Positions 1 to 44,667 of a stretch of 64,000 nt of DNA are shown one piece after another; the first letter of the stretch is position 1, and each line of letters starts with the position of its first letter. The position numbers and the translations under genes were made by a program. The notes under the pieces were generated by a model. The model saw nothing but the letters and a program-made list of their open reading frames with translations. It did no database searches and was not told the DNA's origin. The stretch lies in the IMG/VR virus record IMGVR_UViG_3300023184_000027, positions 62,001 through 126,000 of that record. One strand, written 5' to 3'.

Positions 1-3000
1 GAACCACTAGTCCCTGATGAACCATTCTCACCTGATGAACCACTTGTCCCACTAGACCCCGATGCTCCCGCAACCCCTGAAGTCCCTGAAGTCCCTGATG
101 AACCACTAGTTCCATTAGAACCTGAAGTCCCTGATGAACCACTAGTTCCACTAGAACCTGAAGTCCCTGATGTTCCACTAGAACCTGAAGTTCCCGATGT
201 TCCTGAAGAACCACTTGTTCCACTAGAACCTGATGTTCCTGAAGAACCGCTAGTACCTGACGTACCACTAGAGCCGCTAGTACCTGACGTACCACTAGAG
301 CCGCTAGTACCTGACGTACCACTAGAACCGCTAGCACCTGATGTTCCCGATGAACCACTTGTACCTGACGTTCCCGATGAACCGCTAGTTCCTGATGTTC
401 CTTTAGTTCCTGAAGACCCTGACGTACCACTTGAACCTGATGTACCGCTTGAACCCGATGTACCACTAGTCCCTGAAGAACCACTTGTCCCTGATGTTCC
501 TTTAGTTCCTGAAGAACCTGAAGTTCCTGAAGAACCTGAAGACCCAGCAGCACCTGAAGCACCATTAATATTTGTTGTCCAAGAGTTAAAATTTCCCGTT
601 CCCGTTACACTAGTCACTAAAACAGTTAAAGTACCATCACCAATATTGTAAGCTTGAACTGTCCCGATAAATGAACCAGAAGGATTTGCAATAATTAAAC
701 TCTGACCTACAGTATAAGACAATCCCGAATATGTTGTTAATAATTGAGGATTTCCAACCATTGAGGGTGATAAAGTTATAGGTGTTATTGATTGACCTAT
801 AATAGCTAAACTTGTTCCCGATGAACCGTCCCTACCTGAAGACCCCGATGTCCCACTAGAACCTGTTGCCCCTGACGAACCACTTGTTCCACTAGAACCT
901 GAAGTACCCGATGAACCACTCGCCCCACTAGAACCTGAAGACCCCGATGTCCCACTAGAACCTGTTGCCCCTGACGAACCACTTGTTCCACTAGAACCTG
1001 AAGTACCCGATGAACCACTCGCCCCACTAGAACCTGAAGTACCACTAGAACCACTAGTCCCTGATGTACCTGATGAACCACTAGTCCCTGATGTTCCACT
1101 TGACCCTGATGTTCCGCTTGACCCTGATGTTCCGCTTGACCCTGATGTTCCACTTGACCCTGATGTTCCACTTGACCCTGACGTTCCACTTGACCCTGAC
1201 GTTCCACTTGACCCTGACGTTCCACTTGACCCTGACGTTCCACTTGACCCTGACGTTCCACTAGTACCACTATTACCTGAAGAACCACTTGTTCCCGAAG
1301 AACCACTTGTTCCCGATGTTCCATTTGCTCCTGATGTCCCACTAGAACCGCTAGTTCCTGAAGAACCGCTAGTTCCTGAAGACCCTGACGTACCACTAGA
1401 ACCACTATTTCCTGAAGAACCACTTGTTCCTGAAGAACCACTTGTTCCTGATGTTCCACTTACCCCAGATGTTCCTGATGACCCTGAAGTTCCTGATGAA
1501 CCACTTGTTCCACTAGTTCCTGATGAACCACTTGTCCCACTAGTTCCTGATGAACCACTTGTCCCACTAGTCCCTGATGAACCACTAGTTCCTGACGTTC
1601 CTTTAGTTCCCGATGAACCACTTGTTCCACTAGAACCACTATTTCCACTTGTTCCTGATGAACCACTAGTCCCCGAAGAACCCGATGTTCCGCTAGACCC
1701 TGATATTCCTGATGTACCACTAGAACCTGATGTACCACTAGAACCTGACACCCCACTAGAACCTGATGTTCCTGAAGAACCTGATGTTCCACTAGAACCT
1801 TTATCACCAGCTCTAGCAAAACTCACTATTACCGTACCACCGGTTAAGTTTGAAGCACTACCATTAGATGAAACAGAAGTAACACCAATTTGTCCATAAC
1901 CATTTACTGTACTAGCACTAGTGATTTGATAATCACCATATATATTTGTTCCACCATAAGTTCGACTAATTCTTAAACCACCTTTTATTGTATTTGTACT
2001 AGCACTTAACGCATTTAACCAAGCGGTTGCATCAGCATTTTGACCATCAATTAAACTAACAGATAATATTGTTGTATTACCAAACCCCGAACCATTAAAG
2101 TACGTACCACCCGATGGTGGTAAACTTGGTCCAGTACTTAATGCTGTTAAAGTCCATTGTAAACTATCACCACCATAATTACCATCTCTACCTGATGTTC
2201 CCGGTAAACCACTTGAACCTGACGTTCCTGAAGAACCCGCCTCACCAGACGTTCCTGATGAACCTGTTGTTCCTGATGAACCTGTTGCTCCCGATGTTCC
2301 TGATGAACCCGAAGCCCCTGAACTACCACTTGTTCCTGATGTTCCATTTGCACCTGATGTTCCATTTGCACCTGATGTTCCATTTGCACCTGAAGCTCCC
2401 GAAGAACCACTTGTTCCCGACGCACCTGATGTACCTGAAGAACCACTAGTTCCACTATTTCCTGAAGAGCCTGATGTCCCTGATGTTCCTGAAGAACCTG
2501 ATGTTCCTGACGTACCACTAATCCCACTAGTTCCATTAGTTCCATTAATACCCGACGAACCACTAGTACCATTAATACCTGATGAACCACTAGTACCACT
2601 AGTTCCTGACGAACCACTAGTACCACTAATTCCCGATGAACCACTAGTTCCCGATGAACCACTAGTTCCCGATGAACCACTAGTTCCACTATTACCTGAC
2701 GAACCATTTGTTCCCGAAGAACCCGACGCGCCCGAAGAACCAGTCTCACCTGATGTACCTGACGCACCTGATGAACCTGAAGAACCCGACGCACCTGATG
2801 AACCAGCCCCACCTGATGAACCTGATGAACCCGACACACCTGACGTACCATTAACACCCGACGTACCATTAACACCAGCTGTTCCCGATGTACCGTTAAT
2901 AAATCCAGTAATTGAAACCGTACCTCCCGTTGAGTCGTATAGTTCTAATGTTGTTGCTGCAGAGAAATAAGTCCCTCCTGTAATATATGGAAATATTGCT

Positions 3001-3128
3001 AATACTTGACTTATTTCCGCCTTATACGATGAACCTTGGGGACTTTGTGTCGTATCATAAGGTTTAACAATATGTATTAAGTCATTAACAGTTACGCCAG
3101 TCGCTAAAAGTCTATCGGTTAATCTCAT
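1..3128 (-). CDS. Giant collagen-like (Gly-Thr/Ser-Ser) fibre protein, 3' end beyond the left window edge (>1040 aa)
   Basis: ATG at 3128 (MRLTDRLLATGVTVNDLIHIVKPYDTTQSPQGSSYKAE...). The same frame still reads G-E-N-G-S-S-G-T-S-G at positions 3-32. Three long GTSGSS tracts are separated by globular inserts at ~1800-2170 and ~560-810. Not in the ORF track because it has no stop in the window. Confidence 0.9.
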   Translation of the reverse strand, partial: MRLTDRLLATGVTVNDLIHIVKPYDTTQSPQGSSYKAEISQVLAIFPYITGGTYFSAATTLELYDSTGGTVSITGFINGTSGTAGVNGTSGVNGTSGVSGSSGSSGGAGSSGASGSSGSSGASGTSGETGSSGASGSSGTNGSSGNSGTSGSSGTSGSSGTSGSSGISGTSGSSGTSGTSGSSGINGTSGSSGINGTNGTSGISGTSGTSGSSGTSGTSGSSGNSGTSGSSGTSGASGTSGSSGASGANGTSGANGTSGANGTSGTSGSSGASGSSGTSGATGSSGTTGSSGTSGEAGSSGTSGSSGLPGTSGRDGNYGGDSLQWTLTALSTGPSLPPSGGTYFNGSGFGNTTILSVSLIDGQNADATAWLNALSASTNTIKGGLRISRTYGGTNIYGDYQITSASTVNGYGQIGVTSVSSNGSASNLTGGTVIVSFARAGDKGSSGTSGSSGTSGSSGVSGSSGTSGSSGTSGISGSSGTSGSSGTSGSSGTSGNSGSSGTSGSSGTKGTSGTSGSSGTSGTSGSSGTSGTSGSSGTSGTSGSSGTSGSSGTSGVSGTSGTSGSSGTSGSSGNSGSSGTSGSSGTSGSSGTSGSSGTSGANGTSGTSGSSGTSGSSGNSGTSGTSGSSGTSGSSGTSGSSGTSGSSGTSGSSGTSGSSGTSGSSGTSGSSGTSGSSGTSGTSGSSGTSGTSGSSGTSGSSGASGSSGTSGSSGTSGSSGATGSSGTSGSSGSSGASGSSGTSGSSGTSGSSGATGSSGTSGSSGRDGSSGTSLAIIGQSITPITLSPSMVGNPQLLTTYSGLSYTVGQSLIIANPSGSFIGTVQAYNIGDGTLTVLVTSVTGTGNFNSWTTNINGASGAAGSSGSSGTSGSSGTKGTSGTSGSSGTSGTSGSSGTSGSSGTSGSSGTKGTSGTSGSSGTSGTSGSSGTSGASGSSGTSGTSGSSGTSGTSGSSGTSGTSGSSGTSGSSGTSGSSGTSGTSGSSGTSGTSGSSGTSGSSGTSGSNGTSGSSGTSGTSGVAGASGSSGTSGSSGENGSSGTSG
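838..1035. repeat. 99-nt tandem duplication inside the collagen-like gene
   Basis: Unit starting gaagaccccgatgtcccactagaacctgttgcc occurs at 838 and 937; the copies look identical by eye. Confidence 0.85.
1087..1260. repeat. 18-nt tandem repeat cctga(t/c)gttcc(a/g)cttgac, 9 full copies plus a partial (encodes SGSSGT)
   Basis: Read directly from the sequence. Confidence 0.9.
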
Positions 3129-3469: not shown

Positions 3470-5272
3470 TTAATCTTGTATTAATCTAACAGATAAACCA
3501 ACAGCTTTGGTACTATTATTAGTAGAGCTTCCATTATTGATAGAACCACTATTATAACTTATACCTTTACTATAAGCCTTTAAAGTATTGTATTCTGTTG
3601 ATGTCCACCATGAACCATTATTTTTAATGGAATAAAATATACCGTCATTATTTATGTAATTACGAACACCTCCAGGTAAAGCAGTAAAACCATAAAAATC
3701 GGTTGCACTGGTATTGGGTGTTGTCCAATGAGTTATACCCATTTCTTTTAATTTACCACCAGATAAAGAATATCCTCCAGAAGTGGTTATTAAAGTCTCC
3801 CATTCTGCTTTACTTGGAACATGATATCCTGATGGTGCCAACTGTTTTCTTTGACCCGCATCGGTTTTTGATGCTTCGTCCCAAATTCCCATCACAGCGT
3901 ACCAATTATATAACTTACCATATGTTGTACCAGTTGTTGGACTATTATTATAATAACACCAAGCACCTGTCGTTAATGTTGTCCACTCACTTGTTCCGGT
4001 TATTTGTGGAATTGGCGTTCCATCTGAGTAAGAGTCAACATTTAAATTACAAGCCACCCACCACTGAGCACCAATTTGAACATCTGATAATGTACAAAGA
4101 CCCGGACAAGATGATAAACTATTAAAATTAGTTATAGAGTCAACAACACCCAAAGTAACATGTACAACATATCTACCAAAAGTCCCATATCCTGGTGTTG
4201 GTGATAATCCAGTATCTAAAATAAAATTAGTTGTTCCAAGATATATCGCATTAGTAATACCATATAATTGAACCCCAATACCAATATTTACAAATGTTTT
4301 AAAAATATATCCATTTGGTTGCCCCCCTAAATTCACATAATACGTTTCCCAAATACATTTAGCCTCTTGATTTGTTAATGAATTAGTGAAATTATAAATT
4401 ATTGTTTGGTAAATAACTAATGTTGATAAATAAGTGGATATAGATGGTATTGCCGGTTTTGTAGATGAAGGCGTAGGTGTCATCGTCATTGTTGGAGTAA
4501 TTGTTGGAGTTATCGTATTTGTTGGTGTAGGTGTATTTGTTTGAGTTGGTGTTGGCGTTGGCGATGAAGGTATAGTACCTTCTGTTGGTGTCACCGTTGG
4601 CGTTATTGTAGGTGTCTGAGTATTAGTTGGTGTTATTGTAGGAGTTTGAGTCATTGTCGGAGTTTGAGTTGGTGTAGGAGTTCTCGTTACCTCAGCAGGG
4701 TCAATCAAAGTACATACCGTTATTGCCGTATAATCAAGCCAAAAATCCGTTGTTGTTGCCGTATATGACCCGGCAGGTAAATTCTCAATTGCCGGTGATA
4801 TACTACCTTTATTATTTACACCCCCATTCAACCACACAGTTTTATAAGGAGGTGTACCACCAGTTATTGTTAAAGACGCTTTACCATCAATAGCCCCATG
4901 ATATGATGGGTTTTTTGTATCATTTGGATTACAAGCAACACCCATTGGAAAAATGGTTATTACATTACATTCATTTGATAGGGTATAAGCTGTTATTGAT
5001 GGTGGTGGTGGAGGAAAACAACTAACGGAATCATCACTACCAATACAAGTAGTACAGTCCTCATAGTTTGTTAATGTCGCATTACTCCCAACATATATGT
5101 TTGAATTACTTGGGATAGGTCCAACAATCACATAACCACAAGCTCTAAACTCAGGCGTTATAACAGAATAAATCTCATTAAGATTAAGTGTATCACCAAC
5201 ATAATTACTTAACCCAAAATAATTATCTGAATTAGTCGTTTTGGTACAACAAGTTTGAAAATAATAAGTCAT
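3470..5272 (-). CDS. Fibre/adhesin-like protein: SprB-like repeat, Pro/Thr linker, C-terminal Fib_succ_major (FISUMP) domain
   Basis: GKASLTITGGTPPYKTVW is SprB-like; PTxT tract; IGAQWW-ACNLNV, YGKLYNWYAV, WHVPSKAEW-like segment, GFTALPGG, WWTST and GLSVRLIQD are typical of Fib_succ_major. Confidence 0.8.
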   Translation of the reverse strand: MTYYFQTCCTKTTNSDNYFGLSNYVGDTLNLNEIYSVITPEFRACGYVIVGPIPSNSNIYVGSNATLTNYEDCTTCIGSDDSVSCFPPPPPSITAYTLSNECNVITIFPMGVACNPNDTKNPSYHGAIDGKASLTITGGTPPYKTVWLNGGVNNKGSISPAIENLPAGSYTATTTDFWLDYTAITVCTLIDPAEVTRTPTPTQTPTMTQTPTITPTNTQTPTITPTVTPTEGTIPSSPTPTPTQTNTPTPTNTITPTITPTMTMTPTPSSTKPAIPSISTYLSTLVIYQTIIYNFTNSLTNQEAKCIWETYYVNLGGQPNGYIFKTFVNIGIGVQLYGITNAIYLGTTNFILDTGLSPTPGYGTFGRYVVHVTLGVVDSITNFNSLSSCPGLCTLSDVQIGAQWWVACNLNVDSYSDGTPIPQITGTSEWTTLTTGAWCYYNNSPTTGTTYGKLYNWYAVMGIWDEASKTDAGQRKQLAPSGYHVPSKAEWETLITTSGGYSLSGGKLKEMGITHWTTPNTSATDFYGFTALPGGVRNYINNDGIFYSIKNNGSWWTSTEYNTLKAYSKGISYNSGSINNGSSTNNSTKAVGLSVRLIQD

Positions 5273-19104: not shown

Positions 19105-20094
19105 TTATGATGTTTTTACATAACTTAATCTAACAATATCGTCAACAACTTCCTCGATTGGTTCTTCAACGACATCTTCTATTGGTTCTTCAACGACATC
19201 TTCTATTGGTTCCTCTACGACATCTTCTATTGGTTCTTCAACGACATCTTCTATTGGTTCCTCTACGACATCTTCTATTGGTTCCTCTACGACATCTTCT
19301 ATTGGTTCCTCTACGACATCTTCTATTGGTTCCTCTACGACATCTTCTATTGGTTCTTCAACAACTTCATCTATTGGTTCCTCTACAACATCTTCTATTA
19401 GTTCCTCTACGACATCTTCTATTGGTTCCTCTACGACATCTTCTATTGGTTCTTCAACAACTTCTTCTATTAATTCCTCAATTGGTTCATCTATTGGTTC
19501 TTCAATAACATCTGATTGTACAACATTACTCATATAATCCAATTCAGTTATAGTAAATTCATCAATTATAATATCTGAAGATTCTTCAATAACATTAACA
19601 GGCATCACATCTTTATTATTTTCATCAATTAATTCATCATATTTTACAAAAAAATGTAAAGATGTTAATGATATAATTGGTAATAAACCACCACTTAAAA
19701 AGGCTAACCATCTTTTTAATGATACTATATCAGTAAGGTCTGAACCAAACATTTCCCATATAGGCCCTGTCAACTCTACCCACGACTTAAATAACACACT
19801 ATTAGCATCAATCTCTTTATAGGAGAAGAATATATTACCAATCATTTGTATGAAAGTCACCATTCCAAACATAAACCAAACACCACCTTTAATTTTATTT
19901 GTGGCTGCCAACAAAGCTGTCATAGCACCTATTTCAATAGCGATTGATAAATATATTGCCCAACTAATTGGATTTGTTAAATTATACCACGAAACAACGT
20001 GTGATATTGATATTCCAGCAACCAAAAAAATTGGTACTAAAAACATAGCTCTGATTGGATGAGCCTTAACCCATTCTAAAATTATTTTATTCAT
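19105..20094 (-). CDS. Multi-pass membrane protein with a long acidic EEPIEDVV repeat tail
   Basis: About four hydrophobic helices in the first 150 aa, then about 14 octapeptide repeats. Confidence 0.8.
   Translation of the reverse strand: MNKIILEWVKAHPIRAMFLVPIFLVAGISISHVVSWYNLTNPISWAIYLSIAIEIGAMTALLAATNKIKGGVWFMFGMVTFIQMIGNIFFSYKEIDANSVLFKSWVELTGPIWEMFGSDLTDIVSLKRWLAFLSGGLLPIISLTSLHFFVKYDELIDENNKDVMPVNVIEESSDIIIDEFTITELDYMSNVVQSDVIEEPIDEPIEELIEEVVEEPIEDVVEEPIEDVVEELIEDVVEEPIDEVVEEPIEDVVEEPIEDVVEEPIEDVVEEPIEDVVEEPIEDVVEEPIEDVVEEPIEDVVEEPIEDVVEEPIEEVVDDIVRLSYVKTS
19150..19500. repeat. 24-nt tandem repeat (tcttctattggttc(c/t)tc(t/a)acgaca), about 14 copies
   Basis: Read directly from the sequence. 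Confidence 0.9.
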
Positions 20095-32014: not shown

Positions 32015-33562
32015 ATGGCGTGTTTAGAATCATATTGTTTAAGTAATACTGGTAACATCACATATGATGATAACTATACCAGTGGTGGAACACATAACTC
32101 AAATCTTTATTGGACAGGTCAATCAAATGGGTTATTTATTTATTATTCAACAGGAGATACTCAATGGTGTTTATCTCTAACATTAGATGGTACTTGTCTA
32201 TTATCCGGAAAATCACCTTGTGTTAGCGAATGTCCTGACTTATGCAACACATATTTCTCATCAGGAATGTGTTTAACACCAACTCCAACGCCAACAATTA
32301 ATTGTGATGTGTTAGATTTTATAGCCGTATTAGAATGTGATGCAATCCCATCACCGTCACCAACTTCAACCGTCACACCAACCGTCACACCAACCGTCAC
32401 ACCATCTTTAAACTTATGTTTAACAAATAATATTGATGCGACAATTGAGGGTATATCCCCAACACCAACACCAACACAAACCTCCACACCAACATCCTCA
32501 TCTATAATTGAGAGGAATTGTAGTTTTGCTGCTCCAATAACTTATAACATCATTGATGATAATATCATATGTCCTCAAAGTTATCAATTTCAAGATTGTT
32601 ACAATGGTCAGATGTATTCAACATCAAACCTTACAAACTCAATTGGTGATATATCTTTAGAAAAATTCCAGGTTTATTTATCCATGATAGATGGTTTAAG
32701 TAAATGCGTTTCATATTACGATAAGAGCGAAACAACTTTAGGTGGTTATAACATTGATTTAATTGATGGTCCTTTTGGGTTTAGTAATCAGGGTGATTGT
32801 GTTCATTGTGAACAGGTTGCAACACCTACTCCAACACCAACTAAAACTCAAACCCCAACACCTACAATAACCCCTACAATGACTCGTACACCAACTCAAA
32901 CACCAACAATAACCCCAACGACGACGACTACTCAAACTCCAACAAACACACCAACAAATACTCAAACTCCAACACCAACACCGACACCAACACTAACACT
33001 AACACCAACAATTACTCAAACACCAAATGCGTCCCCATCACCCACACCAACTCAAACTTCCACATTAACACCAACACCAACAAAATTACCGATTACTGGA
33101 TTGTCATGGATAACAACAAAAAACACTACAGGAATCTCAGGTTGTGAAAGTGCAGGATGGGTAATTAGTAACCTAAATCAAAGTATAAGATTTAATGTTG
33201 CACCATCAGCCAATTGTTCAGGCGGAACTTGCGGTATTCAACAAGACGCCACAGCAACAGCAACAATAACTGTGGGGGCAACTAACACAAATTTAAATCT
33301 CAGTTTTATTGGAATAGGTGAAAAACAAGATGCCAATTACGACAGAATCACATTCTATCTTGATGGTGTTGAGTTGGCGAATGGTCACGCCCCTGGAGGT
33401 GGTTTACAATGTAATGACGGTCCAATTATATCAACAGTACTTGTACCTAACCCACATTTATTACTTGCAAATACAACACATACATTGTTAATTGATTTTA
33501 CAACTGTAGATGCATACTACCATGTCAACTCATATTATCAGGCAGATTTAAGTTTCACATAA
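32015..33562 (+). CDS. Cys-rich fibre/adhesin-like protein with Pro/Thr linkers and a C-terminal beta-sandwich
   Basis: Multiple PTxT tracts separating Cys-rich modules. Confidence 0.75.
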   Translation: MACLESYCLSNTGNITYDDNYTSGGTHNSNLYWTGQSNGLFIYYSTGDTQWCLSLTLDGTCLLSGKSPCVSECPDLCNTYFSSGMCLTPTPTPTINCDVLDFIAVLECDAIPSPSPTSTVTPTVTPTVTPSLNLCLTNNIDATIEGISPTPTPTQTSTPTSSSIIERNCSFAAPITYNIIDDNIICPQSYQFQDCYNGQMYSTSNLTNSIGDISLEKFQVYLSMIDGLSKCVSYYDKSETTLGGYNIDLIDGPFGFSNQGDCVHCEQVATPTPTPTKTQTPTPTITPTMTRTPTQTPTITPTTTTTQTPTNTPTNTQTPTPTPTPTLTLTPTITQTPNASPSPTPTQTSTLTPTPTKLPITGLSWITTKNTTGISGCESAGWVISNLNQSIRFNVAPSANCSGGTCGIQQDATATATITVGATNTNLNLSFIGIGEKQDANYDRITFYLDGVELANGHAPGGGLQCNDGPIISTVLVPNPHLLLANTTHTLLIDFTTVDAYYHVNSYYQADLSFT

Positions 33563-33629
33563 TAACAAATTTAAGTCGTCAATTTTAGATTAAAATTAAA
33601 TAAATTAAGAATTACAATATTTATAATAC

Positions 33630-36047
33630 ATGGGGTTCATATTAAAAAACACATCAGGGTTAATTAGCACTAGATTAACAGACAAAGCAAGACAAAACCT
33701 ATCTCAAGGTAGTTTTAACATATCTTATTTTCAAATAGGAGATAGTGAAGTAACCTACAACGCAATTGATTCATTAAATTTATCTAATCTTAATATATTA
33801 GAGCCAAATTTTAATTCTCAAAATTCAAGCGGTTCTGCTCAAGAAAATAAACAAAACATTAAATATCCGTACTATGTAGACGGAACTGAAGGTAATACAT
33901 ACGGAATTCCTTATATGGCATCCGACGTTAGCCCTATCTACAATAAAGCCGCAATGAGAGGTTTTTTTACTGGTGAAACTACAAATGAAACCATAAGTAA
34001 TTGGAGTGCATTGACCGATAATCAACATGTTATTAACTCAAATTATGTTATTGACATGTTTTTATTAAAAGGTACTACCAGAACAACCATAAAATATTCC
34101 GGTTGTAACTCAAATATAATTAGACTACCTTCTATTGGGGATTTTATTACAATTTATTACGATGGAAATGGATATAATAATTGTTCTTGCGATTTAGGAA
34201 CCCCTACCACACCTACACCTACACCAACACCAACTGTAACACCAACTTATGACGAATGTGTAGTATATCCAACACCAACCCCATCATCTACCTGTTGTTT
34301 AACACCCACACCAAGTTGTGGGCCAGAACCAATAACGGAATGTGTTATGTCAATTTCTAGCGGATACACAATATTAACATATAAAATTATAGACATTTGT
34401 AATCTTGTATTAACCGTTGATAGACCTTTACCTAATTTCACTAACTTAACTGAAAGTTGTTATTACGCCAGAACATTAATATACCCACCAAATATAACAT
34501 CATTATACGATAGTGTAACACCTTCACAACATTGGAGTGAGGATATTATCAATTTTGAATCTATTTGTACCACAGATGAATTTGATGTTAAAATTTGGAA
34601 CATGAATATTCCTTGGTCTGAAAATCCTGCTGGGTTAGACTCTGCATTATACAAAGATTATACTCAATTTGGGTCAACATCTTATTTAGGAACAAAAGAA
34701 TATTTAGGTTATATGTCTAATAGTGGGCAAACCAGTAACAACACGGTTAATTATGTAAATTCCCTTGGAGATATTATCACTGTACCCCCTAAAGACCAAA
34801 AAGCTATTTCAATTATTCATTATACTAATCAAAGTATAGATTTGTTTTATGGTGAAAAATTTGCATTAGAACCATACGACAACACAACACCTGAAGACAC
34901 AACAGGTGAAGCTAGAAACTTTAAATTACATATACCAACATTAATGTGGCATAAATCACCAACTTGTGGTAATGGACAAACTTTTTGGGTTGACCCACCT
35001 GGTTTTGATAATTTAACAATATCGGGAAGCCCATTATTTAAAGTTCAATATATTAAATCAACTAAAAATCCTGATATGAATCAGCCAGGTATTAGATATT
35101 ATAATTTATGGGACTCAAACGCCAATGAATATAATAGTGGATACCCTAATAGAGTTGGTAAAGTATTTCCTGACCAAAAAATTATTATTATTGATGATGA
35201 GGAAATTATTGCTGCACTATCATATAAATCAAATAGAAACTGGACATTGCCGTCACCAAGAATATCATTAATCACACCTAACAGTTGTGAAATAAATAAT
35301 GGTTCAATATCTGTAGATGGTGTTCTATCTGGTTCATCCGAATATATGTATGTCACATATCGATTAAGTAATAGCGAATTATTTACAAATTCATTACATT
35401 GTAATTACTATTCAAAAATACAAGGAGCTAATATTACAACAACCAATCTTGGTACTAATAATGTTGGTGTTAGATTTGGTAATGAATTTCCATGTTTAAA
35501 TCAAATATCTGAATCACCAATCCTTAACACTGGATTTGTTGCCGACACATTTGAAATAATATGTCAGAAAGTAACAGGAGATGTTAGACCTGAACCTTTA
35601 GAATGGAGAGTGATTGATTTCACATCAATGGTTAGCGCAACAACAATTAATGGATATATAACCGTAGAAGGTTTAACAGGTACAACATTTGTTATCACAT
35701 CAGATGACTACGATAACGCGGAGTTTGACATATACAATTTAGATTATCTTTCATTACCACCGACAGAATATACCGGAACTTCATTAAATTTTGGTGACGA
35801 ATATTATTTTTACGGAGCATTAGAAACCGATATTGAGGCAACAATTTATGAAATGAAATATAAGATAAATTTAGGTCAAGCCGAGTTCCAAGCAAGTTCT
35901 AACCCTACATGGTCAAGCACCGTAAAACCATATATTTCAGAAATAGGTCTTTACGATACTGAAGATAACCTTATGATTATATCAAAGCTACAATCACCTG
36001 TTTTAAGACAAGGATTACAACAGTTTTTAATTAAATTTGATTTTTAA
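33630..36047 (+). CDS. Tail/baseplate-associated structural protein (tail-collar-fibre-like ends, large internal insertions)
   Basis: N-terminal RLTDKARQNLSQGSFNISYFQIGDSE and C-terminal ISEIGLYDTEDNLMIISKL match the terminal motifs of tail-collar-fibre-type proteins; internal Cys/PT module. Confidence 0.6.
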   Translation: MGFILKNTSGLISTRLTDKARQNLSQGSFNISYFQIGDSEVTYNAIDSLNLSNLNILEPNFNSQNSSGSAQENKQNIKYPYYVDGTEGNTYGIPYMASDVSPIYNKAAMRGFFTGETTNETISNWSALTDNQHVINSNYVIDMFLLKGTTRTTIKYSGCNSNIIRLPSIGDFITIYYDGNGYNNCSCDLGTPTTPTPTPTPTVTPTYDECVVYPTPTPSSTCCLTPTPSCGPEPITECVMSISSGYTILTYKIIDICNLVLTVDRPLPNFTNLTESCYYARTLIYPPNITSLYDSVTPSQHWSEDIINFESICTTDEFDVKIWNMNIPWSENPAGLDSALYKDYTQFGSTSYLGTKEYLGYMSNSGQTSNNTVNYVNSLGDIITVPPKDQKAISIIHYTNQSIDLFYGEKFALEPYDNTTPEDTTGEARNFKLHIPTLMWHKSPTCGNGQTFWVDPPGFDNLTISGSPLFKVQYIKSTKNPDMNQPGIRYYNLWDSNANEYNSGYPNRVGKVFPDQKIIIIDDEEIIAALSYKSNRNWTLPSPRISLITPNSCEINNGSISVDGVLSGSSEYMYVTYRLSNSELFTNSLHCNYYSKIQGANITTTNLGTNNVGVRFGNEFPCLNQISESPILNTGFVADTFEIICQKVTGDVRPEPLEWRVIDFTSMVSATTINGYITVEGLTGTTFVITSDDYDNAEFDIYNLDYLSLPPTEYTGTSLNFGDEYYFYGALETDIEATIYEMKYKINLGQAEFQASSNPTWSSTVKPYISEIGLYDTEDNLMIISKLQSPVLRQGLQQFLIKFDF

Positions 36048-36053
36048 TTAAAT

Positions 36054-36653
36054 ATGAAAAAAACACTTAAAGAAAGTCCTAAAGTTTTAGGTCTTGATGT
36101 ATCGACTCGGACAATTGGATGGGCATTATTTGATATACAAAGTAGAGAACTATTAGAACTAACACATATATCTCCAGTTCCTAAACCAAAAGAAGAAAAT
36201 AAAATTAAAGAATTATTACTTAAAAGTGAAATTTTTAAATCAAAACTTATTCAATATAAAGATTTAGGTATAACTAAAGTTATTATTGAGGAACCATTAT
36301 TAAATTCTAATAATGTGTACACAATTCAAACTCTATTAAGATTTAACACTTTAATCACTAAAGAAATTTATGATGTATTAGGAATTGTTCCCGAATACAT
36401 TTCAACTTACAACTCTCGTAAATTCGCATTTCCCGAACTTGTCAAACAAAACGATAAAAATAAATTTGTTTTATTTGGTGGTCTACCTAAAGATTGTGAC
36501 AAAAAACAAATTATTTGGGATTTGGTCGCAAAAAGAGAGCCTCAAATACAATGGTTATACACCAGAAACAACACACTTAAAAAAGAGAATTTTGACCAAA
36601 CCGACGCTTACGCTTGTGTTTTAGGTCATATGAATCAAGAAAATATTTGGTAA
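36054..36653 (+). CDS. RuvC-like Holliday junction resolvase
   Basis: VLGLDVSTRTIGWA, IIEEP, DQTDA acidic triad. Confidence 0.85.
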   Translation: MKKTLKESPKVLGLDVSTRTIGWALFDIQSRELLELTHISPVPKPKEENKIKELLLKSEIFKSKLIQYKDLGITKVIIEEPLLNSNNVYTIQTLLRFNTLITKEIYDVLGIVPEYISTYNSRKFAFPELVKQNDKNKFVLFGGLPKDCDKKQIIWDLVAKREPQIQWLYTRNNTLKKENFDQTDAYACVLGHMNQENIW

Positions 36654-36658
36654 AAATT

Positions 36659-36684
36659 AACCCACCTTTATGGTGGGTTTTTTA
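36659..36684 (+). terminator. Intrinsic terminator between convergent genes
   Basis: AACCCACC-TTTAT-GGTGGGTT followed by a T-run. Confidence 0.75.
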
Positions 36685-36691
36685 TTCATTG

Positions 36692-39600
36692 TTAATTATA
36701 ACATTCGACGTAAGTATCGGAACTTACATTTACCTCAAAATATAAATCAATGTCAGTATTAGGTACTAAACCATAATAAAAAGAAGCATCTGGTAAAGTA
36801 CCACAATAACTGTATCCAACAACTGTTGGTTCAGTATATGGGTATCCAGTTAAAGCCTCACCAAAAGACGTATTAACATAACTATTAGGTGGGAATGATA
36901 CTCGATGTTTTATACCTATGTAAAGTGGGGTACCAGGTTCTATTGTGAGCAGAACCGATTCAAAACTAATGCTAAGTGCACTACTCAACCATTCCACCCA
37001 ATTTATATTATCATTACTAACATAAAGTTTAATGCTATTATTTGACGGATAATTATATCCAGTTGGGCTAGGAGGATAAGAAGGATTACGTCTTCTAACA
37101 TTTATCATAACATTCTCGAATACTGCAACATAATTATTACAGTCGTCACATGTTTCAAATGTCTGATTTAATACTGGTGTAAAATAATTTCCGGAATTAT
37201 TTATCACATCAAATAATGGATTTAATACTGGATAACCATTAGATATGTACATAAATTCCCAACAAGTGTCATCATCTGTTTTTCTTAAAATCTCACCAAC
37301 AACAGTTGTAAATCCTGGCAATACTTGAACCACATATTGATTATTATTAGAACAATTTCTATAAACATAATATTTTTGTGGTGGTGACGGAGTAACCGTT
37401 GGCGTTTGAGTCATTGTAGGAGTTTGAGTCATTGTTGGTGTTTGAGTCATTGTCGGAGTTTGAGTCATTGTAGATGTTTGAGTCGGTGTTTGAGTGTTTG
37501 TTGGTGTTGGCGTTGGTGATGAAGGTATGGTACCTTCTGTTGGAGTTACCGTTGGCGTTTGAGTCATTGTTGGAGTTACCGTTGGCGTTTGTGTCATTGT
37601 TGGCGTTATTGTAGATGTTGGCGTTATTGTTGGTGTTGGTGTAGGTGTTTGAGATGGAACAGGACCGCAATATTGACACGAAATACCATAATTAATAAGT
37701 AAACTAACAACAACATGATTTGGAACTAAAGATTCCTCGTCACATTTAGTAATTATTTGAATTTGATTATTTATTGGGTCAATAAGAGTTTGACCAACTT
37801 GGTCAAAACTATCTACTAACGTCTTTAACTCATCATAAAATTGATTATCATATGGATAATCATTTAATGAATAACTAATATAAAAATCGTTAAATTTTTC
37901 CTCATCACCAATTTTAACAATTAACCTAAAATAACCCGCTTCTAAAATACAATTAGTAAATCCAGACACTTGAGTATAATACCCATCATAATACATTTCA
38001 TATATTCCGTTTTTACCTAATTCACCGATATCTTCAAAATTACTATCACAAATAGTATAAGACTCGTAAGATGATAATTTATCATACCCATAAATTCTTA
38101 TTGAGTTTTGTTTAACACAATTATCTGAATCAGTCACAGTTAAAGTATATGTGCCCGCACTTAAATTAGTTATGGTATAACCGGTTTGTCCATTAACATT
38201 AGAACTCCATTGTAAATCAAATGTAGGTGTACCACCAGTTATTACCACATTAATTGTCCCATCAGAACCATTTGTCGCATCAGTACCAACTAATAAAAAC
38301 CCAACATTCTCGGATGAGTCAATTATAAAAGGTTGGATTTGTTGACACGGAGTTGAACTATAATCTGTTATTTGAGCAACATATACATTTGAAACTAAAT
38401 CAGTAAAGGTTACGGAACTTAACGATGTTCCTATTATTGATTGAGACCCTATGTCAATTGTGTATGGCGGTATTCCCCCCACTATTTCCACATTAACAAT
38501 ACCATTAGGTGTATTACAAGTAGTTCCTGTGGTTAAAATATTTATAGTATATAACGATTCATTAATAACCTCATATGTGTTGGTATAAACACACACACCA
38601 TTTGAAATGGTTAAAGTATATACACCAGAATGTAACCCGTTAAACGACCAACTTAAACTTGAGGTAACATTTGTTGTTGAATTATTATTTGAATCCGTCA
38701 ATGTATAGGTAATGTTACCATTAGTACCATTAAGGATTATAGATATAACCCCATCTGAATGGCCACACTTTGAATTGGCAATATTCACTGACACCACATT
38801 AAACCCTGTGGGTGTTTGTAATGTTGTTGAACTGACAAAACTACATAAAGCGGCGTCTTGGACGTAAACTGAAACAACACCACCCGGGATATTAATAAAT
38901 GTGTATTGGGAATCAAACGAAACTGTTGATTCTCCGGTTGAGGCTGAATAATAATATGGTGATGTACCCCCCGTTATAAAAACCGTTAATTCACCATCGT
39001 TCGCAAAACAACCAGGACTAATGGATGTAAAACCCCCTAACCCTATTTGAGGTACTCGAATAACCTCAACACTTTTAGGTATTACACACCCTGTATTATC
39101 TGTTACGGTAACGCTGTAAGACCCATTAGTTAACCCTGTAATCGACGATAATGTACCACCATTAGACCATAGATAAGTATATGGGGGATTCCCTGTTAAT
39201 CCTGTTACAAATATCTTACCTGAATTAACATTACAACCAGCATCATTAACAACATAAAACCCATAATCTAAAGTAGTTGATGATTTAATTATACAAGTTT
39301 CTGATTTACCCGTACACCCACCACCATCGTCAGCAACAACATAATAAGTTCCGGCAGATAGAGAATTAAAAGAAAAATTAGAATTTAATGTAGACCCTGA
39401 TGATAAATATCCACTAGTATTTTCATATAAATAGTAATTTGCAACACCATATTGATTCTGTGTTTGAGCGGTTATCGCACCATTATTAAAGTCACAAGTA
39501 GTGTTTCGTTGGTTTATTATACTAACACAAGTACCACTTGATATGTAAATATTTACCGGAACTGTTGTAATTCCGGGACTATTACACGAATCAAGAAGAT

Positions 39601-39802
39601 TAAATGAATATGTACCCGCCGATAAACTATCAATGGTATACCCTGTTATACCCGCGCCTAATGGAATTGTTCCGTAAGCGGGTGATAACCATTCTATTGT
39701 ATAATCAGGGGCACTCCCCTGAATATCAATTGAGAAAGACCCTAATGAGAGATTAGAACAATCTCCTGTTATACTCGATATATATGATAAACTACAAGCC
39801 AT
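36692..39802 (-). CDS. Large Cys-rich adhesin/fibre with SprB-like repeats and a Pro/Thr linker
   Basis: Repeated G-x-I-x-V-x-I-T-GG-T-x-PY-x-Y-x-W...L-x-x-G-x-Y-x-V-x-V-T-D-x-x-G-C units, then a (TMTQTP)n tract. Confidence 0.8.
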
Positions 39803-42800
39803 TAATTACATAAAATTTCAAAATTTATTCCAACATTTAATTCAAAATTAATGCCGGTTGAGTTCTCGGAACATATTGAATGGTAAACCACCACATTCTC
39901 ATTACCTGATAAATAATAGTCATAACCATAATTTATTAAACTATCTAAACTAATTTGTAAAGCAACATCCCATTGTGATTGACTAGGAGCACTTAAACTT
40001 GTGGTATACCCTGACCCCTCAAAAAATGAATTTTTTATAATATCTTCACCATTAAGTTTCATTTCAACATACCAAACACTTTTTAAATTATTATACAAAC
40101 AATTATTTAATGTATAACCCATTTCAGTTAGATATGTATTTAACACACTACCCAAAACATCATTAAATGAAGATACAATAGGATTCTCAACCCACGGATA
40201 TCTACCACAAGACACCGATTGAATCGGACAATCATATGTAAAAATATTTGATGTTAGAGAACAAGGTCTACAAAGAACAGGAACAAATTTACACCCTTCT
40301 TGTCTTCTCCACACAAACTTTTGTCTATGGAAAATTGAATTCTCATATCTAACACCCGTATTCCATATTGTGGTTGCTGGTATCATCTGTTCAATTAATC
40401 TAACCCAATAATCACCAAGACCATTAACATATTGAATCATTGTCTGATAATTAAAATTATCGTTCTCTAATCCGGCAAGTTTTTCAGATTCTAAATATTT
40501 CCAATAAATGGATTCTAATGTTGGGTAACCCATTGTTTTACCATCACTAATATATTGTCTGTTTCTAACATTAATTGTATTTAACCAAAAAGTTTGAGCA
40601 AACTCAAAAAATGTTTTATTCTTTGGTTGTGGATTAATAACCGTATTATCAACCCCACCCCTATCAGGATAATTTGATACAGGATTTGGATTACAATAAG
40701 TTGGTGCAACATAATTTAAACCCTCATTTGGTATAGGGAAATTATAATGTCTTGACATAGTCCAAACATCATACGATAATCCTTGACCGGGATTTAAGAA
40801 TAAATCAGTATTTTTAGCATTTAAAACTAATTTATCATTTTCAGTATAATACCTTGCGTTGTAATTACCATCTAAATTTTCTCGTAACCCAATTTCATTA
40901 TCAACCCAACTTTTATTATTATCAATTGTTTGTCTAATGTTAAACCCTAACGGCATAAACGGAAATTTAACATATCTATCCAAATATTCACCACCATAGG
41001 TATATGGACTTAATGTTGTTTGATAATCAGGATTTGAACCAGTGAAAACGCTATTTGTAAGATTAACTTGTTCCGGAGCTCTATGTTGAGGTGTTGATTC
41101 AAACCAACCACTACCTTTTTCATAATAATAATCTTCAGTATTTGGAGGTGTTGATGGGTAACCTTCATTATCCACAGGATATTCACTCAACGAAATATTA
41201 ACATCTTTTAATATTGCGGTAGAAGTAAACCCGGTATATTCCACATTTTGGAATCTATATGTGTTACCAGCTTCTATTGTTGGGACATTTTTAACATATG
41301 TTCCTCCCGATATCGCAGCATAATTAGAATTAAAATCAGACATATTAATTCTTTGGTCAGCCAAATACACATACTCATTAAAATCTACTAATGCATCCGG
41401 AGCCCCAATTAATCTTAATAATATCTCAACAGATTTTCTAGTTCCTTTAGACTTAAACAAATAAGCGGAATTAAGAATTAAATTCCTATAATATTGGTAA
41501 TTTAATTCATCCGGCGTTTGTTGGTCACTAGTTCCAGCAAATTGAGACACATTTTTGTTTTTTTCACCAAAAACGGATGTTAAAAATTCATCATTCGTTA
41601 TTGGAGAGATATTAGTATTCCACCCCAAAGTTTGTGCTAAATTTTTTAATAATTGAGATGGGATATCATTACCTACATTATAATTAACCGAATTCATATA
41701 AGCCAAAGCATCTATGAATTTTTTTGTTTCATCAAAACTTCTACCATATATTTGTAAAACGGATTCCATCTTTTGACCTACAGTATCAAAGTCTTTAAAC
41801 GCACCTGTCGTTAAAAATCTTGATATTAAATTTGTTTTATATAAATCAAATGATTCACTCAAACCATTTAACGTTGTTAAATAGTTGGTGAAGGCTGGAG
41901 TTATAATATCAAGATTCCAACTACCATATAAAGGCCAAGTAACATTTTGATTTAAAACATAATAAGTTCCATCATCAGCATCTGCCGGTACCTGAAATGT
42001 TGCTGTATATTTTGGTACCACATCCCTATTTAATAAAAATCTTTGAACCTCATCTAAATTTTCATTAAATACCTTATTAACCTCTAAATCATTAGGTCTA
42101 ATTACCAAATCATCATAGGTATTAGATTGCCCCGAAAATGGATTTCCTTTAACATATATTTTCAATGTTCCCGAAGATAATGATGTTGTTGGAATTATTG
42201 CCGTCACATCAAACCCATTATTCTTATAATATAACGAATACTTCGCATACTGCATTGTCATATCTCTCAACACAGACACCTGAACTTCTCTTAATTGTAA
42301 ATTTCTTGTGGAATTAACCGTAAAATCAACATCAAAAGGATTTCTAATTCTAGAAACATTTAGTTCAAAACTAGTTTCATCATCAGAACCAAGATAAACA
42401 ATATTTGATGCCGTCTCACCAGTCACATAATTCTCATCCATTAAAGTTACCTCTAACGCCGCAGGAAATTTACTAATAATTGTCTCAACAGAAGTAGATA
42501 TTCTCTTAACCATTGACCCATATTGAGTAAAATTAGTAACTTGGGTAAGGTCAAAATTCGGATATACCTTAAAATTATTCTCAAATATAATTTTAGATTG
42601 AGCAACACTACTAACCCCCAAACCATCCAAATTAATTGGTTCTGAAAAATTACCAGTGTTAAAAGTCCTGTTATTTTTTTCAGTAATTGATGTTGTAAAT
42701 TCAAAATTCCCCTGCGTTAAACCTCCTCCTTGGACTAATTGGAAACCAACTAAATCATCGGAAAATGTACCAGCACCTGTTGCCGATTGCGGGGGACAAG

Positions 42801-42819
42801 TATATTTTATTAACGCCAT
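39802..42819 (-). CDS. Baseplate/tail protein with a Tail_P2_I-like central domain
   Basis: [10 protein letters not shown]...[29 protein letters not shown] is characteristic of P2 gpI/gp7-type wedge proteins. Confidence 0.7.
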
Positions 42820-43727
42820 TATTCAGTTATATTTGTAAAGTTTTTACTATAATCAATATTGCTACCTCTATCTTGTCTAACTTCATATAACAAGTTATTA
42901 AATTGGTCTCTAATTTCGTATAAGTTATATTGTTTGTATATGTTATTAGCTGTATCATATAGAGTATAAATTCCATCATCCATTGATTTAGTTTGATTGC
43001 CAAACAACGCAATTGCAAGAGTTGAGAAATCATGTTCAGCTATTTCAACATCTAATGTTATTGGATTAAAGAAAGTATTACTAATAATAATATTTTGATT
43101 TGGCTGACCAATATATGGGGTAGCATTTGGTTTATTAGTAGGTGCTGATGATGGGGACATAGTACAAAATATTAAATTAGTACTATTATCCGTATATCTA
43201 TATCTTATTGCTTTTTGAGATGTATTAACCAAATTTTGAACAACCGGTTCACAAAAGAAAGAAGATGTGATTAATCTGAAAAAATTAGGTATTTTTGTGT
43301 TATCAGAATTTAAATACTCAACCCTAAAACCAACTAATCCTTGATTAACAAATTTGTTTTTAAATTGTGCTGGAACACTATTCAAATCAATTATAATACC
43401 TTTAACATTAGGTAATGCCGACAACACCCCACAATCCAATATAGTGGTTCTAATTTGAGCCGGTCTAATAAATAAGGTATAGATACCTATTTTGTTAAAT
43501 TGGTCAGCAGGGAGTCTTAAATTGTATAATCCACCCAATATTTCAACATCCGCAACACCACCAGTGGTTTGAGAATTAAAATAGGGTCTTAAAATTGATG
43601 TCGCATCTAATGTTGTTAAAACAAAATTATCTGTTTCATCCCTTGATGGGGTAAAATTTAATATTATCTCAACATCCGCTGGAGATACATCTGCGGGTCT
43701 TATTGTTCCGTAAGTAGAAGTTGCCAA
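42819..43727 (-). CDS. Putative structural protein (TTG start)
   Basis: 302-aa ORF in the structural operon, coupled to the next gene via TAATG. Confidence 0.7.
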   Translation of the reverse strand: MATSTYGTIRPADVSPADVEIILNFTPSRDETDNFVLTTLDATSILRPYFNSQTTGGVADVEILGGLYNLRLPADQFNKIGIYTLFIRPAQIRTTILDCGVLSALPNVKGIIIDLNSVPAQFKNKFVNQGLVGFRVEYLNSDNTKIPNFFRLITSSFFCEPVVQNLVNTSQKAIRYRYTDNSTNLIFCTMSPSSAPTNKPNATPYIGQPNQNIIISNTFFNPITLDVEIAEHDFSTLAIALFGNQTKSMDDGIYTLYDTANNIYKQYNLYEIRDQFNNLLYEVRQDRGSNIDYSKNFTNITE

Positions 43728-43731
43728 ATTT

Positions 43732-44667
43732 TTAAGTTATTAATTCATTTATTGTTATAGAACATTTAGTTCTTTTTTTTATATTTTCTTCCCAAGTAAT
43801 AAATTCAAGATTTTTTATATTACCAATGATTTCCGATGGTAAATTATTATTAAAACCTTCCAAAATTGAGTATTTATGGTCTAAATGATACGCTCCGTCA
43901 ATACCTGAATTACCTCGTTTGTTATAATTAATCAAATCACTTATTGGTTGTTGTCTAGTTATTTTCATAACATCATTTTTATATTTCGTAAAATCGTCAA
44001 CAATTTTCAAATACTCACTATAATTAATATCTCGATATCTTTTAATCAAACCGACAGAAACCCCCTCACTAACATTTCTACGATACATTGTTAATCCCAA
44101 ATATTTATCTATAAAAGATTTTGTTAACCCTAATTGATTTGCAATATCTTCACTATTTTTATATTCATTTAAATATAAATTCTTAATTATTTCTTTTTGT
44201 TCTTCAGATAAATTAATTTTAACTCCATTACTACGACCTTCCTTTAATATCCCTTTATCTTTCAACATTTTTTTAATAGGCGTTTTACTCACATTATATA
44301 TTTCACAGATTTTTTGTAATGACACCCCTTCTTTATATTTTTCAATAACATTATCAACATCACTATTATTAAAATGTTTTTTAATATCACCACGGTTTTC
44401 AACCCAAACATTTTTTTCTTTTAAAATATTTTTTACATTATCTCGGTTTATTTTAACTAACATAGCTATTTTACTAAAACTAACACCTTTAACATACAAT
44501 TCAACTACATTATTAACAATCTCTTCACCATATTTTTTTTTCTGATGTGTTAATGAACATTTATTACACACCCATTTTTCACGGATAGAACACTCTAATC
44601 TACTTTTAGTTGTGTAAGATTGAATACCTCCGCAATTAGGACAATTTTTATTATAATTTCTAGCCAT
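43732..44667 (-). CDS. Free-standing HNH homing-endonuclease-like protein with Zn finger and HTH repeats
   Basis: CPNC...CNKC, three HTH-like repeats, C-terminal YHLDHKYS...GNIKNLEFITWEENIKK. Confidence 0.7.
   Translation of the reverse strand: MARNYNKNCPNCGGIQSYTTKSRLECSIREKWVCNKCSLTHQKKKYGEEIVNNVVELYVKGVSFSKIAMLVKINRDNVKNILKEKNVWVENRGDIKKHFNNSDVDNVIEKYKEGVSLQKICEIYNVSKTPIKKMLKDKGILKEGRSNGVKINLSEEQKEIIKNLYLNEYKNSEDIANQLGLTKSFIDKYLGLTMYRRNVSEGVSVGLIKRYRDINYSEYLKIVDDFTKYKNDVMKITRQQPISDLINYNKRGNSGIDGAYHLDHKYSILEGFNNNLPSEIIGNIKNLEFITWEENIKKRTKCSITINELIT

What the first reader, a model, noticed from the sequence alone, without database searches (positions are those of the whole stretch)
4545..4604. 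Near-identical 60-nt Pro/Thr-linker DNA shared by two fibre genes 33 kb apart: a candidate module-shuffling hinge
Seen: 4545-4604 and 37500-37559 match at 56/60 nt, all four differences synonymous, encoding [20 protein letters not shown]; flanking TMTQTP units (gtaggagtttgagtcattg) are also shared. The genes are otherwise dissimilar, yet both read [SprB-like Cys-rich N-part]-[PT linker]-[different C-terminal domain], and both copies are in the same orientation. Two more PT-linker genes lie at 32015-36047. Inference: the linkers act as recombination or gene-conversion hinges that swap receptor-binding tips among a family of fibres, an RT-free, invertase-free diversification route; RuvC, SbcCD and an exonuclease are encoded nearby.
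Basis: partly seen in the sequence, partly recalled or inferred. Interest (0 to 1): 0.62.

Follow-up and report, generated by a model that had tools for sequence, protein, structure and literature searches.

The report
Shared linker where phage tips swap
Two otherwise unrelated surface-protein genes of a freshwater jumbo phage share the DNA of a Pro/Thr-rich linker, and in related phages this linker is the main (not the only) seam at which different end domains are joined to conserved front parts; this is ordinary phage tip mosaicism with an unusual seam.

Summary
Window 4545-4604 and 37500-37559 match at 56/60 nt, and every difference is synonymous. This is the best of 153 PT-tract pairs in the 208-kb phage record (next 52/60, median 41). 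It also contains a non-PT motif, EGTIPSS, found nowhere else in the genome. In relatives, both genes keep their N-terminal part while everything from the linker to the stop codon is lost or replaced. One natural chimera, assembled twice independently, joins gene A's N-part through this linker to the module that follows gene B's linker in the window. The same linker core joins three upstream and four downstream module sets. Linker type follows the genome, not the gene (11 informative sites against 1). A third genome has a 62/63-nt tract shared by two unrelated genes that starts inside the linker. So linker DNA moves between genes and is a preferred seam. A and B are direct repeats with no second homology, so a crossover would delete 33 kb rather than swap tips. 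The laid contigs from four runs show no A/B chimera. The core peptide is under purifying selection. This is evolutionary mosaicism, not a programmed diversifier.

The parts
3470..5272 (-). Gene A (P0001, 600 aa): N-part, PT linker, middle domain, Fib_succ_major domain
   Evidence: ORF list, translation, Pfam PF09603 at residues 398-598 with E 1.3e-34
4700..5272 (-). Gene A conserved N-part (residues 1-191, Cys-rich, one SprB-like repeat)
   Evidence: 70-86% identical in L037, L038, L039 and L040 and present in L140; it is kept while the rest of the gene changes
4454..4699 (-). Gene A Pro/Thr linker (residues 192-273): coding minisatellite around a unique core
   Evidence: PT scan; 18-nt period arrays at 4491-4552 and 4632-4682; GC 0.44 against 0.316 for the window
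4544..4603 (-).
3470..4453 (-). Gene A C-terminal cassette after the linker (middle domain 4085-4453, Fib_succ_major 3473-4084, stop 3470-3472)
   Evidence: Absent in G001/L040, replaced in L039/L141 and in L140. Left boundary at window 4473-4696, right boundary at 3477-3500
36692..39802 (-). Gene B (P0002, 1036 aa): SprB-repeat N-part, PT linker, QKYY module, tip W
   Evidence: Pfam SprB PF13573, 3 stretches, E 6.3e-10; last gene of a block that starts with a baseplate wedge gene at 54995-56833
37667..39802 (-). Gene B conserved N-part (residues 1-712)
   Evidence: Matched over residues 1 to about 712 in 36 IMG/VR loci at 34-85% identity
37376..37666 (-). Gene B Pro/Thr linker (residues 713-809)
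   Evidence: 18-nt TMTQTP arrays at 37398-37484 and 37538-37608; GC 0.45
37499..37558 (-). Linker core in gene B, same 20 codons as in gene A
37127..37375 (-). QKYY module (residues 810-892, small Cys-rich domain)
   Evidence: Also in L001, L002, L005, L041, in locus A of L039/L141, and in a 1164-aa protein of distant relatives
36692..37126 (-). Tip W (residues 893-1036) plus stop codon: an orphan end domain joined without a PT linker
   Evidence: Absent in L005 and replaced by Fib_succ_major in L001; boundaries at window 37128-37130 and 36686. No Pfam match and no IMG/VR relative. A contig of run X8 diverges at 36685
32015..36047 (+). Two further PT-linker genes (32015-33562 and 33630-36047), in the opposite orientation
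   Evidence: linker length differs between orthologues (93, 56 and 58 aa)

Best explanation
The window is part of a freshwater jumbo phage (208-kb record, estimated 71% complete). Genes A and B belong to a family of at least nine modular PT-linker proteins, probably virion adhesins or fibres. Each has a conserved N-terminal part, a Pro/Thr linker and exchangeable C-terminal modules. The linker is a length-variable coding minisatellite of 18-nt period around a unique core.

Shown: the 60-nt match is true DNA homology of that core. The same core sits between different module pairs in related phages. The stretch from the linker to the stop codon is lost or replaced as a unit. Linker type follows the genome rather than the gene.

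Inferred: linker DNA is copied between paralogous genes by non-reciprocal recombination (gene conversion or template switching during recombination-dependent replication or co-infection). The short homology of PT tracts (exact runs of 17-26 nt here, a 45-nt run within the 62/63-nt tract in G001) favours junctions there. An unstructured, periodic, length-tolerant linker lets almost any in-frame junction survive selection. The core peptide is then kept by purifying selection.

This is mosaicism on an evolutionary time scale, not a programmed switch.
For: - Homology is not just composition: this is the best of 153 tract pairs, the EGTIPSS motif is unique, and third positions agree at 15/20.
- Locus A in four relatives keeps the N-part and flanks (84-95% nt) while everything from the linker to the stop codon is replaced or absent. 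L039 and the independently assembled L141 (98% identical) carry the QKYY module plus another domain. L140 carries a new tip. G001/L040 has nothing after the N-part.
- Of 31 B orthologues whose N-part end is seen, the downstream part falls into 9 unrelated families or is absent (7 loci). Six of the 9 families are joined through a PT linker.
- The core motif xGTIP[SP]S occurs behind three different upstream parts (A-N, B-N, LamG-like x2) and ahead of four downstream module sets.
- On contig IMGVR_UViG_3300001282_000797 both A and B carry TPGASPSQ where the window carries TEGTIPSS. Quartet-informative sites number 11 by genome, 1 by gene and 0 other.
- In G001 two unrelated genes share 62/63 nt, starting inside the core and with no similarity to its left.
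- The 20-aa core is identical in winA, winB and L140, and all 5-7 nt differences per pair are synonymous.
Against: - Seams also occur without PT linkers: window 37127/37128, and L013, L015, L016 and L018. Domain-boundary selection alone could therefore place breakpoints at linkers.
- A/B synonymous identity (0.75) is no higher than that of orthologous N-parts between sister genomes (0.66-0.82). The L037/L001 pair is near background (10/19). So there is no sign of recent or frequent conversion.
- Exact homology runs are short, 17-26 nt.
- Only two genomes carry both A and B.
- The contigs of the 4 runs laid (of 20 runs that hold the stretch) show no A/B chimera.
- The virion role of A and B is not demonstrated.
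Confidence: 0.62

Rival explanations
1. The linker is a passenger. It was once copied along with a neighbouring module, and breakpoints map to linkers only because junctions inside folded domains are lethal. Linker DNA homology plays no causal part in recombination.
For: Seams without PT linkers exist. The synonymous divergence of the A/B core is as old as the split of sister phages. Exact runs are only 17-26 nt, and A and B share no second homology at their gene ends.
Against: Linker type is independent of both the upstream and the downstream module and follows the genome instead (11:1:0 informative sites). The G001 tract of 62/63 nt begins and ends inside linkers, with unrelated sequence in the left part of the core.
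Confidence: 0.25
2. The core is a functional peptide, for example a site of modification or cleavage, or a docking site for a genome-encoded partner. It is kept alike in both proteins by selection, and the genome-specific variants reflect co-evolution with that partner rather than DNA exchange.
For: All differences among winA, winB and L140 are synonymous, whereas the A N-part diverges by 14-30% in protein. G-containing centres (PGLSP, KGLNP, LGLSP) recur in many PT linkers of this phage group.
Against: Third codon positions and a rare codon (GCG in the L037/L001 pair) are shared beyond background, and the G001 tract is 98% identical at the DNA level. These point to DNA descent, not convergence. 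No partner has been identified.
Confidence: 0.1
3. Chance or compositional resemblance between low-complexity PT tracts, or a metagenome misassembly across repeats.
For: Unrelated PT tracts in this genome reach 50-52/60 in-frame identity and exact runs of 20-26 nt.
Against: The unique EGTIPSS motif occurs only at these two sites. An independent contig spans the B linker. The L039 chimera returns to the locus A flank after the foreign tip and was assembled twice independently.
Confidence: 0.03

Closest known systems
T-even phage long-tail-fibre locus: recombination between conserved motifs in gp37 and the glycine-rich motifs (GRMs) of the gp38 adhesin (Tetart et al. 1998 as cited in PMC3157838; Trojet et al. 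2011, PMC3157838)
   Same: Short conserved stretches separate variable specificity segments and are the places where genetic exchange swaps adhesin specificity. The design is a conserved attachment part plus exchangeable specificity parts.
   Different: The GRMs form a structural core inside one folded domain and are essential. Here the seam is an unstructured, length-variable Pro/Thr minisatellite between whole domains. It is shared by non-orthologous genes of one genome, and the exchanged units are whole unrelated domains.
Streptococcus thermophilus phage antireceptor: domains and the variable region VR2 separated by collagen-like repeats (Duplessis and Moineau 2001, as cited in PMC5601072)
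   Same: Low-complexity repeat DNA borders the host-range-determining region of a phage receptor-binding protein. From my memory of the 2001 paper, the repeats were proposed as recombination hot spots.
   Different: Those are Gly-X-Y collagen repeats that form a triple helix, not PT linkers, and they concern allelic variation within one gene. The hot-spot proposal was not re-read here.
Pro-Thr box of Cellulomonas fimi CenA and Cex (Warren et al. 1986, Proteins 1:335; from memory, not retrieved here)
   Same: A roughly 20-residue Pro/Thr linker is conserved almost perfectly between two otherwise different genes of one genome. The flanking catalytic and binding domains are in shuffled arrangements, and region shuffling at the linker was inferred.
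   Different: Those are bacterial secreted glycanases, not phage virion proteins. No population of relatives was available to show repeated cassette replacement or genome-wise co-variation of linkers.
General mosaicism of phage receptor-binding proteins: conserved N-terminal anchor with swapped C-terminal tips (for example PMC10579305, PMC13195805)
   Same: A conserved N-part with a variable C-part, and cassette replacement bounded by conserved flanks.
   Different: In those cases homologous recombination in conserved flanks of orthologous genes is enough. Here modules also move between non-orthologous genes through a shared linker.

Membership tests
Phage RBP module exchange at conserved short motifs (T-even gp37/gp38 type) | A conserved short sequence borders variable segments, and natural variants have breakpoints there | tested here: met
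   L039/L141, L140 and G001 have their left breakpoint at window 4473-4696, which is the linker. Six of 9 tip families of B orthologues are joined through PT.
Phage RBP module exchange at conserved short motifs (T-even gp37/gp38 type) | Exchange changes host range; the proteins are adhesins of the virion | not testable with these tools
   There is only context. B ends a block that starts with a baseplate wedge gene. A lies next to a collagen-like tail-fibre gene. A and B have no PHROG match.
Phage RBP module exchange at conserved short motifs (T-even gp37/gp38 type) | Sequence homology to gp37 or gp38 | tested here: not met
   The Pfam and PHROG scans give only SprB and Fib_succ_major. This is an analogy of mechanism, not family membership.
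Gene conversion / concerted evolution of paralogous segments | Paralogous segments inside a genome are more alike than orthologous segments between genomes | tested here: met
   20-codon core differences: winA-winB 5 and L037-L001 11, against winA-L037 27 and winB-L001 23. Informative sites 11:1:0. G001 pair 62/63 nt. Only three genomes were available.
Gene conversion / concerted evolution of paralogous segments | The events are recent or recurrent (synonymous divergence of paralogues well below that of orthologues) | tested here: inconclusive
   Third-position identity is 15/20 in the window and 10/19 in L037/L001, against 0.66-0.82 for orthologous N-parts. Only the G001 tract looks recent.
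Diversity-generating retroelement | A reverse transcriptase, and a template/variable repeat pair with adenine-specific differences | tested here: not met
   No PF00078 match in the own record, which is 71% complete. The five differences are G/A, A/T, T/C, G/A and T/A, all synonymous.
Invertase-driven tail-fibre switching (Gin/Cin/shufflon type) | A serine or tyrosine recombinase and inverted repeats flanking alternative 3' ends | tested here: not met
   No PF00239 match in the own record. The two copies are direct repeats 33 kb apart. Tyrosine recombinases were not searched.
SprB repeat proteins (PF13573) | Repeats above Pfam's gathering score | tested here: met
   Gene B: 39 bits against a cut-off of 28, in 3 stretches. 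Gene A is below threshold and only resembles one B repeat (44% over 48 aa).
Fib_succ_major domain (PF09603) | A domain match above the gathering score | tested here: met
   Gene A residues 398-598: 120.6 bits against a cut-off of 33.9. Paralogues lie in two other PT-linker genes of the genome at different positions. The fold is not confirmed because the model failed.

The most novel reading that the evidence does not exclude
In this group of freshwater jumbo phages, Pro/Thr-linker minisatellites act as true recombination hot spots. They form a shared 'splice site' in DNA that lets any member of a family of about ten adhesin genes, within one genome or between co-infecting phages, acquire any other member's end domains in frame. 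The linker core is homogenised genome-wide by conversion and carries a selected function of its own.
Probability: 0.3. Interest if true: 0.7.

Novelty: new variant of a known kind. Interest (0 to 1): 0.5.

Why it matters
Tip swapping in phage receptor-binding proteins is well known, but what fixes the position of the seams is rarely clear. Here a single recognisable linker core can be followed through several genomes. It connects three different front parts to four different sets of end modules, and it changes type genome by genome rather than gene by gene. That makes one question testable: does low-complexity linker DNA itself guide recombination, or does it merely tolerate it? It also gives a practical rule for annotating and engineering such proteins in uncultured jumbo phages: cut at the PT linker, and treat everything from the linker to the stop codon as the cassette. 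Finally, it flags a strongly conserved peptide inside a supposed spacer.

Tried and rejected
- Megablast of window 36000-44000 against GenBank phages found no match. tblastn of gene B gave one weak hit (27.6% identity) in an uncultured 642-kb phage. There is no close cultured relative.
- PHROG scans of A, B and most neighbours gave nothing.
- AlphaFold2 on a 4-sequence alignment of the Fib_succ_major domain failed (mean pLDDT 35.7), so no fold search was run.
- phmmer of that domain against PDB sequences found nothing.
- Tip W has no relative in IMG/VR and no Pfam match.
- Reads test: only Logan contigs were available. The joints inside 37420-37650 are cross-mapping of other PT-linker genes; for example, the letters between 37559 and 37421 are gene A's own 4605-4624. 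No A/B chimera was seen, but contigs cannot show rare recombinants, so this says nothing either way.
- The 17-nt core pattern scan of IMG/VR gave 57 + 14 loci, of which only 7 lie in a PT context; the rest are chance matches.
- In distant relatives the A-N-like domain is followed by poly-Thr, not PT, so they did not add A/B pairs.
- A search for a second homology at the A and B gene ends found none.
- A DGR and an invertase mechanism were considered and rejected.
- One PHROG call failed because of a wrong frame reference and was repeated.

Full report
**What the window is.** The window is bases 62001-126000 of a single 207,952-bp viral contig. Its GC content is 31.6% and CheckV estimates it as 71% complete. 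It encodes a baseplate wedge protein, ribonucleotide reductase, a DnaB-like helicase, a primase, an SbcC-like protein and an exonuclease. It is therefore a jumbo tailed phage. The DNA is held by 20 public runs from 9 studies of lake and freshwater metagenomes. It has no close cultured relative.

**The observation.**
- Positions 4545-4604 and 37500-37559 match at 56/60 nt, both within genes on the - strand.
- In codon register the core is 4544-4603 against 37499-37558. It matches at 55/60 nt, all five differences are synonymous, and both copies encode [20 protein letters not shown].
- The record holds 18 PT tracts in nine ORFs. Among their 153 pairs, the best in-frame 60-nt matches are 56 (this pair), then 52, 50, 50 and 50, with a median of 41. 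Composition and codon bias therefore explain much of the identity.
- Three things composition does not explain. The non-PT motif EGTIPSS occurs only at these two places in the genome. Third codon positions agree at 15 of 20, against a background of 0.41-0.52. An independent study's contig spans the B linker without a difference.

**Anatomy.**
- Gene A (3470-5272, 600 aa) reads as N-part (residues 1-191), PT linker (192-273), a middle domain, and a Fib_succ_major domain (PF09603, E 1.3e-34).
- Gene B (36692-39802, 1036 aa) reads as an SprB-repeat N-part (1-712), PT linker (713-809), a small Cys-rich 'QKYY' module (810-892), and an orphan tip W (893-1036).
- Outside the linker, A and B share only one SprB-like repeat.
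- Both linkers are tandem arrays of 18-nt period around the unique core. Their GC content is 0.44-0.45, against 0.316 for the window.
- B is the last gene of a block that starts with the baseplate wedge gene. A lies beside a collagen-like tail-fibre gene.
- That A and B are virion adhesins is an inference from this context. Neither has a PHROG match.

**Relatives of gene B.** Thirty-six IMG/VR loci encode an orthologue of the B N-part (34-85% identity), and in almost all of them the match stops at residue 712, where the linker starts. Of the 31 loci where the end of the N-part is seen:
- seven have a stop codon there;
- the others continue into nine mutually unrelated C-terminal families;
- six of those nine families are joined through a PT linker and three are joined directly.

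The closest relatives differ from the window only at the far end. In L001 tip W is replaced by a Fib_succ_major domain, and in L005 it is absent. The boundaries are at window 37128-37130 and 36686. The first is a module junction with no PT linker; the second lies just past the stop codon. A contig of run X8 also diverges at 36685.

**Relatives of gene A.** Locus A behaves in the same way.
- L039 is syntenic with locus A on both sides. From inside the linker to the stop codon, however, it carries the QKYY module (76% nt identity to window 37645-37181) plus another domain.
- The same chimera was assembled independently in another metagenome (L141, 98% identical). Because it returns to the locus A flank after the foreign tip, it is not a misassembly.
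- L140 has 95%-identical flanks, the A N-part, a linker with the identical 20-residue core, and a different, new tip.
- In the complete 322-kb relative G001, the gene ends where the linker would begin.
- L037 and L038 have an extra domain inserted before the Fib_succ_major domain. That domain is 40% identical (E 2e-39) to the tip of the B orthologues L007-L012.
- The left boundaries fall at window 4473-4696, which is the linker. The right boundaries fall at 3477-3500, which is the stop codon and the start of the next gene.

**The linker moves on its own.**
- The core motif xGTIP[SP]S, in a PT context, occurs behind three different upstream parts: A-N, B-N, and a pair of LamG-like domains in a third gene of G001. 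It occurs ahead of four downstream module sets.
- On contig IMGVR_UViG_3300001282_000797, which carries both genes, A and B both have TPGASPSQ where the window has TEGTIPSS.
- Over 20 codons the within-genome pairs differ at 5 and 11 nt. The orthologous pairs differ at 27 and 23 nt.
- In the 45 nt that align without a register shift, 11 informative sites group the sequences by genome, 1 by gene and 0 the third way.
- In G001 the B linker and the third gene's linker share 62 of 63 nt. The tract starts inside the core motif, and the sequence to its left is unrelated.
- Linker type is thus independent of the modules on either side and tracks the genome. This is the signature of non-reciprocal DNA exchange between paralogous linkers.

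**Limits on the hinge idea.**
- Seams also exist without PT linkers. Selection for junctions at domain boundaries could therefore account for part of the pattern.
- The synonymous identity of the A/B core (0.75) is no higher than that of orthologous N-parts between sister genomes (0.66-0.82). The second genome's pair is near background. Only the G001 tract looks recent.
- A and B are direct repeats 33 kb apart. The longest exact run between them is 26 nt, and there is no second homology at the gene ends. A crossover would delete replication genes rather than swap tips.
- No reverse transcriptase or resolvase-type invertase is present. There is also no evidence of a programmed process; the contigs of the four runs laid show only cross-mapping of other linkers.
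- The 20-residue core is identical in winA, winB and L140, and every nucleotide difference is synonymous, although the A N-part diverges by 14-30% in protein. The core is therefore under purifying selection and is probably more than a spacer.

**Verdict.** The match is real and homologous. The PT linker is the preferred, but not exclusive, seam at which C-terminal cassettes are exchanged in a family of modular phage surface proteins, and linker DNA itself is exchanged between genes. Whether linker homology causes the junctions or only tolerates them remains open. I put about 0.6 on the combined explanation and 0.3 on linkers being true hot spots.

**Comparison with what is known.** The nearest known cases are:
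- exchange at conserved motifs in the T-even gp37 and gp38 tail-fibre proteins (PMC3157838);
- collagen-like repeats in the Streptococcus thermophilus phage antireceptor (PMC5601072);
- from memory, the Pro-Thr box shared by Cellulomonas fimi CenA and Cex.

Literature searches found no report of PT linkers as seams in phage fibre genes. I rate this a new variant of a known kind, of moderate interest.

Noticed in passing
window 43732-44667 (- strand): This 311-aa ORF has HNH-endonuclease and DNA-binding PHROG matches (phrog_5104, E 1.6e-23). It is missing from the otherwise collinear relatives L001 and L005, whose alignment jumps from window 44685 to 43742. It looks like a homing-endonuclease insertion inside the baseplate/fibre gene block.
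   Followed up: partly
window 4544-4603 and 37499-37558; L140: The 20-residue linker core is identical in three genes or genomes with only synonymous differences, and G-containing centres (PGLSP, KGLNP, LGLSP) recur in many PT linkers of this phage group. A conserved peptide inside a supposed spacer has no explanation yet.
   Followed up: partly
window 3-3128 (- strand), runs off the window's start: This very long collagen-like protein (more than 1042 aa, PF01391, E 2.7e-104, many overlapping 9-135-nt tandem arrays) matches tail-fibre PHROGs. In L039 about 10.5 kb here (window 3248 back to 7.3 kb before the window's start) is replaced by 2.4 kb holding another PT-linker gene.
   Followed up: partly
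window 19142-19513: A perfect-phase 24-nt tandem repeat, 15.5 copies at 87% match, lies inside ORF 19105-20094 (329 aa, no PHROG match).
   Followed up: no
whole record, outside the window at window coordinates 98452-104595: A 2047-aa ORF has seven PT tracts and two large internal duplications of about 400 aa (47% identical). It is related to the C-part of the 1007-aa PT protein just before the window's start.
   Followed up: no
window 36054-36653 (+ strand): A weak RuvC-like resolvase match (phrog_159, E 1.3e-5) lies convergent with gene B, 39 nt from its stop codon. The right boundary of the tip W cassette (36686) lies in this short spacer.
   Followed up: no
L120-L124, L129 (distant relatives): The SprB-like second half of the A N-part recurs in 464-763-aa proteins. 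There it is followed by a poly-Thr run (8-9 Thr) instead of a PT linker, so another low-complexity linker type sits at the same seam.
   Followed up: no
window 32813-33091 and the orthologues in L001 and L005: The main PT linker of gene 32015-33562 is 93 aa in the window, 38+18 aa in L001 and 58 aa in L005. Linker length changes quickly, as expected from slippage in a coding minisatellite.
   Followed up: partly
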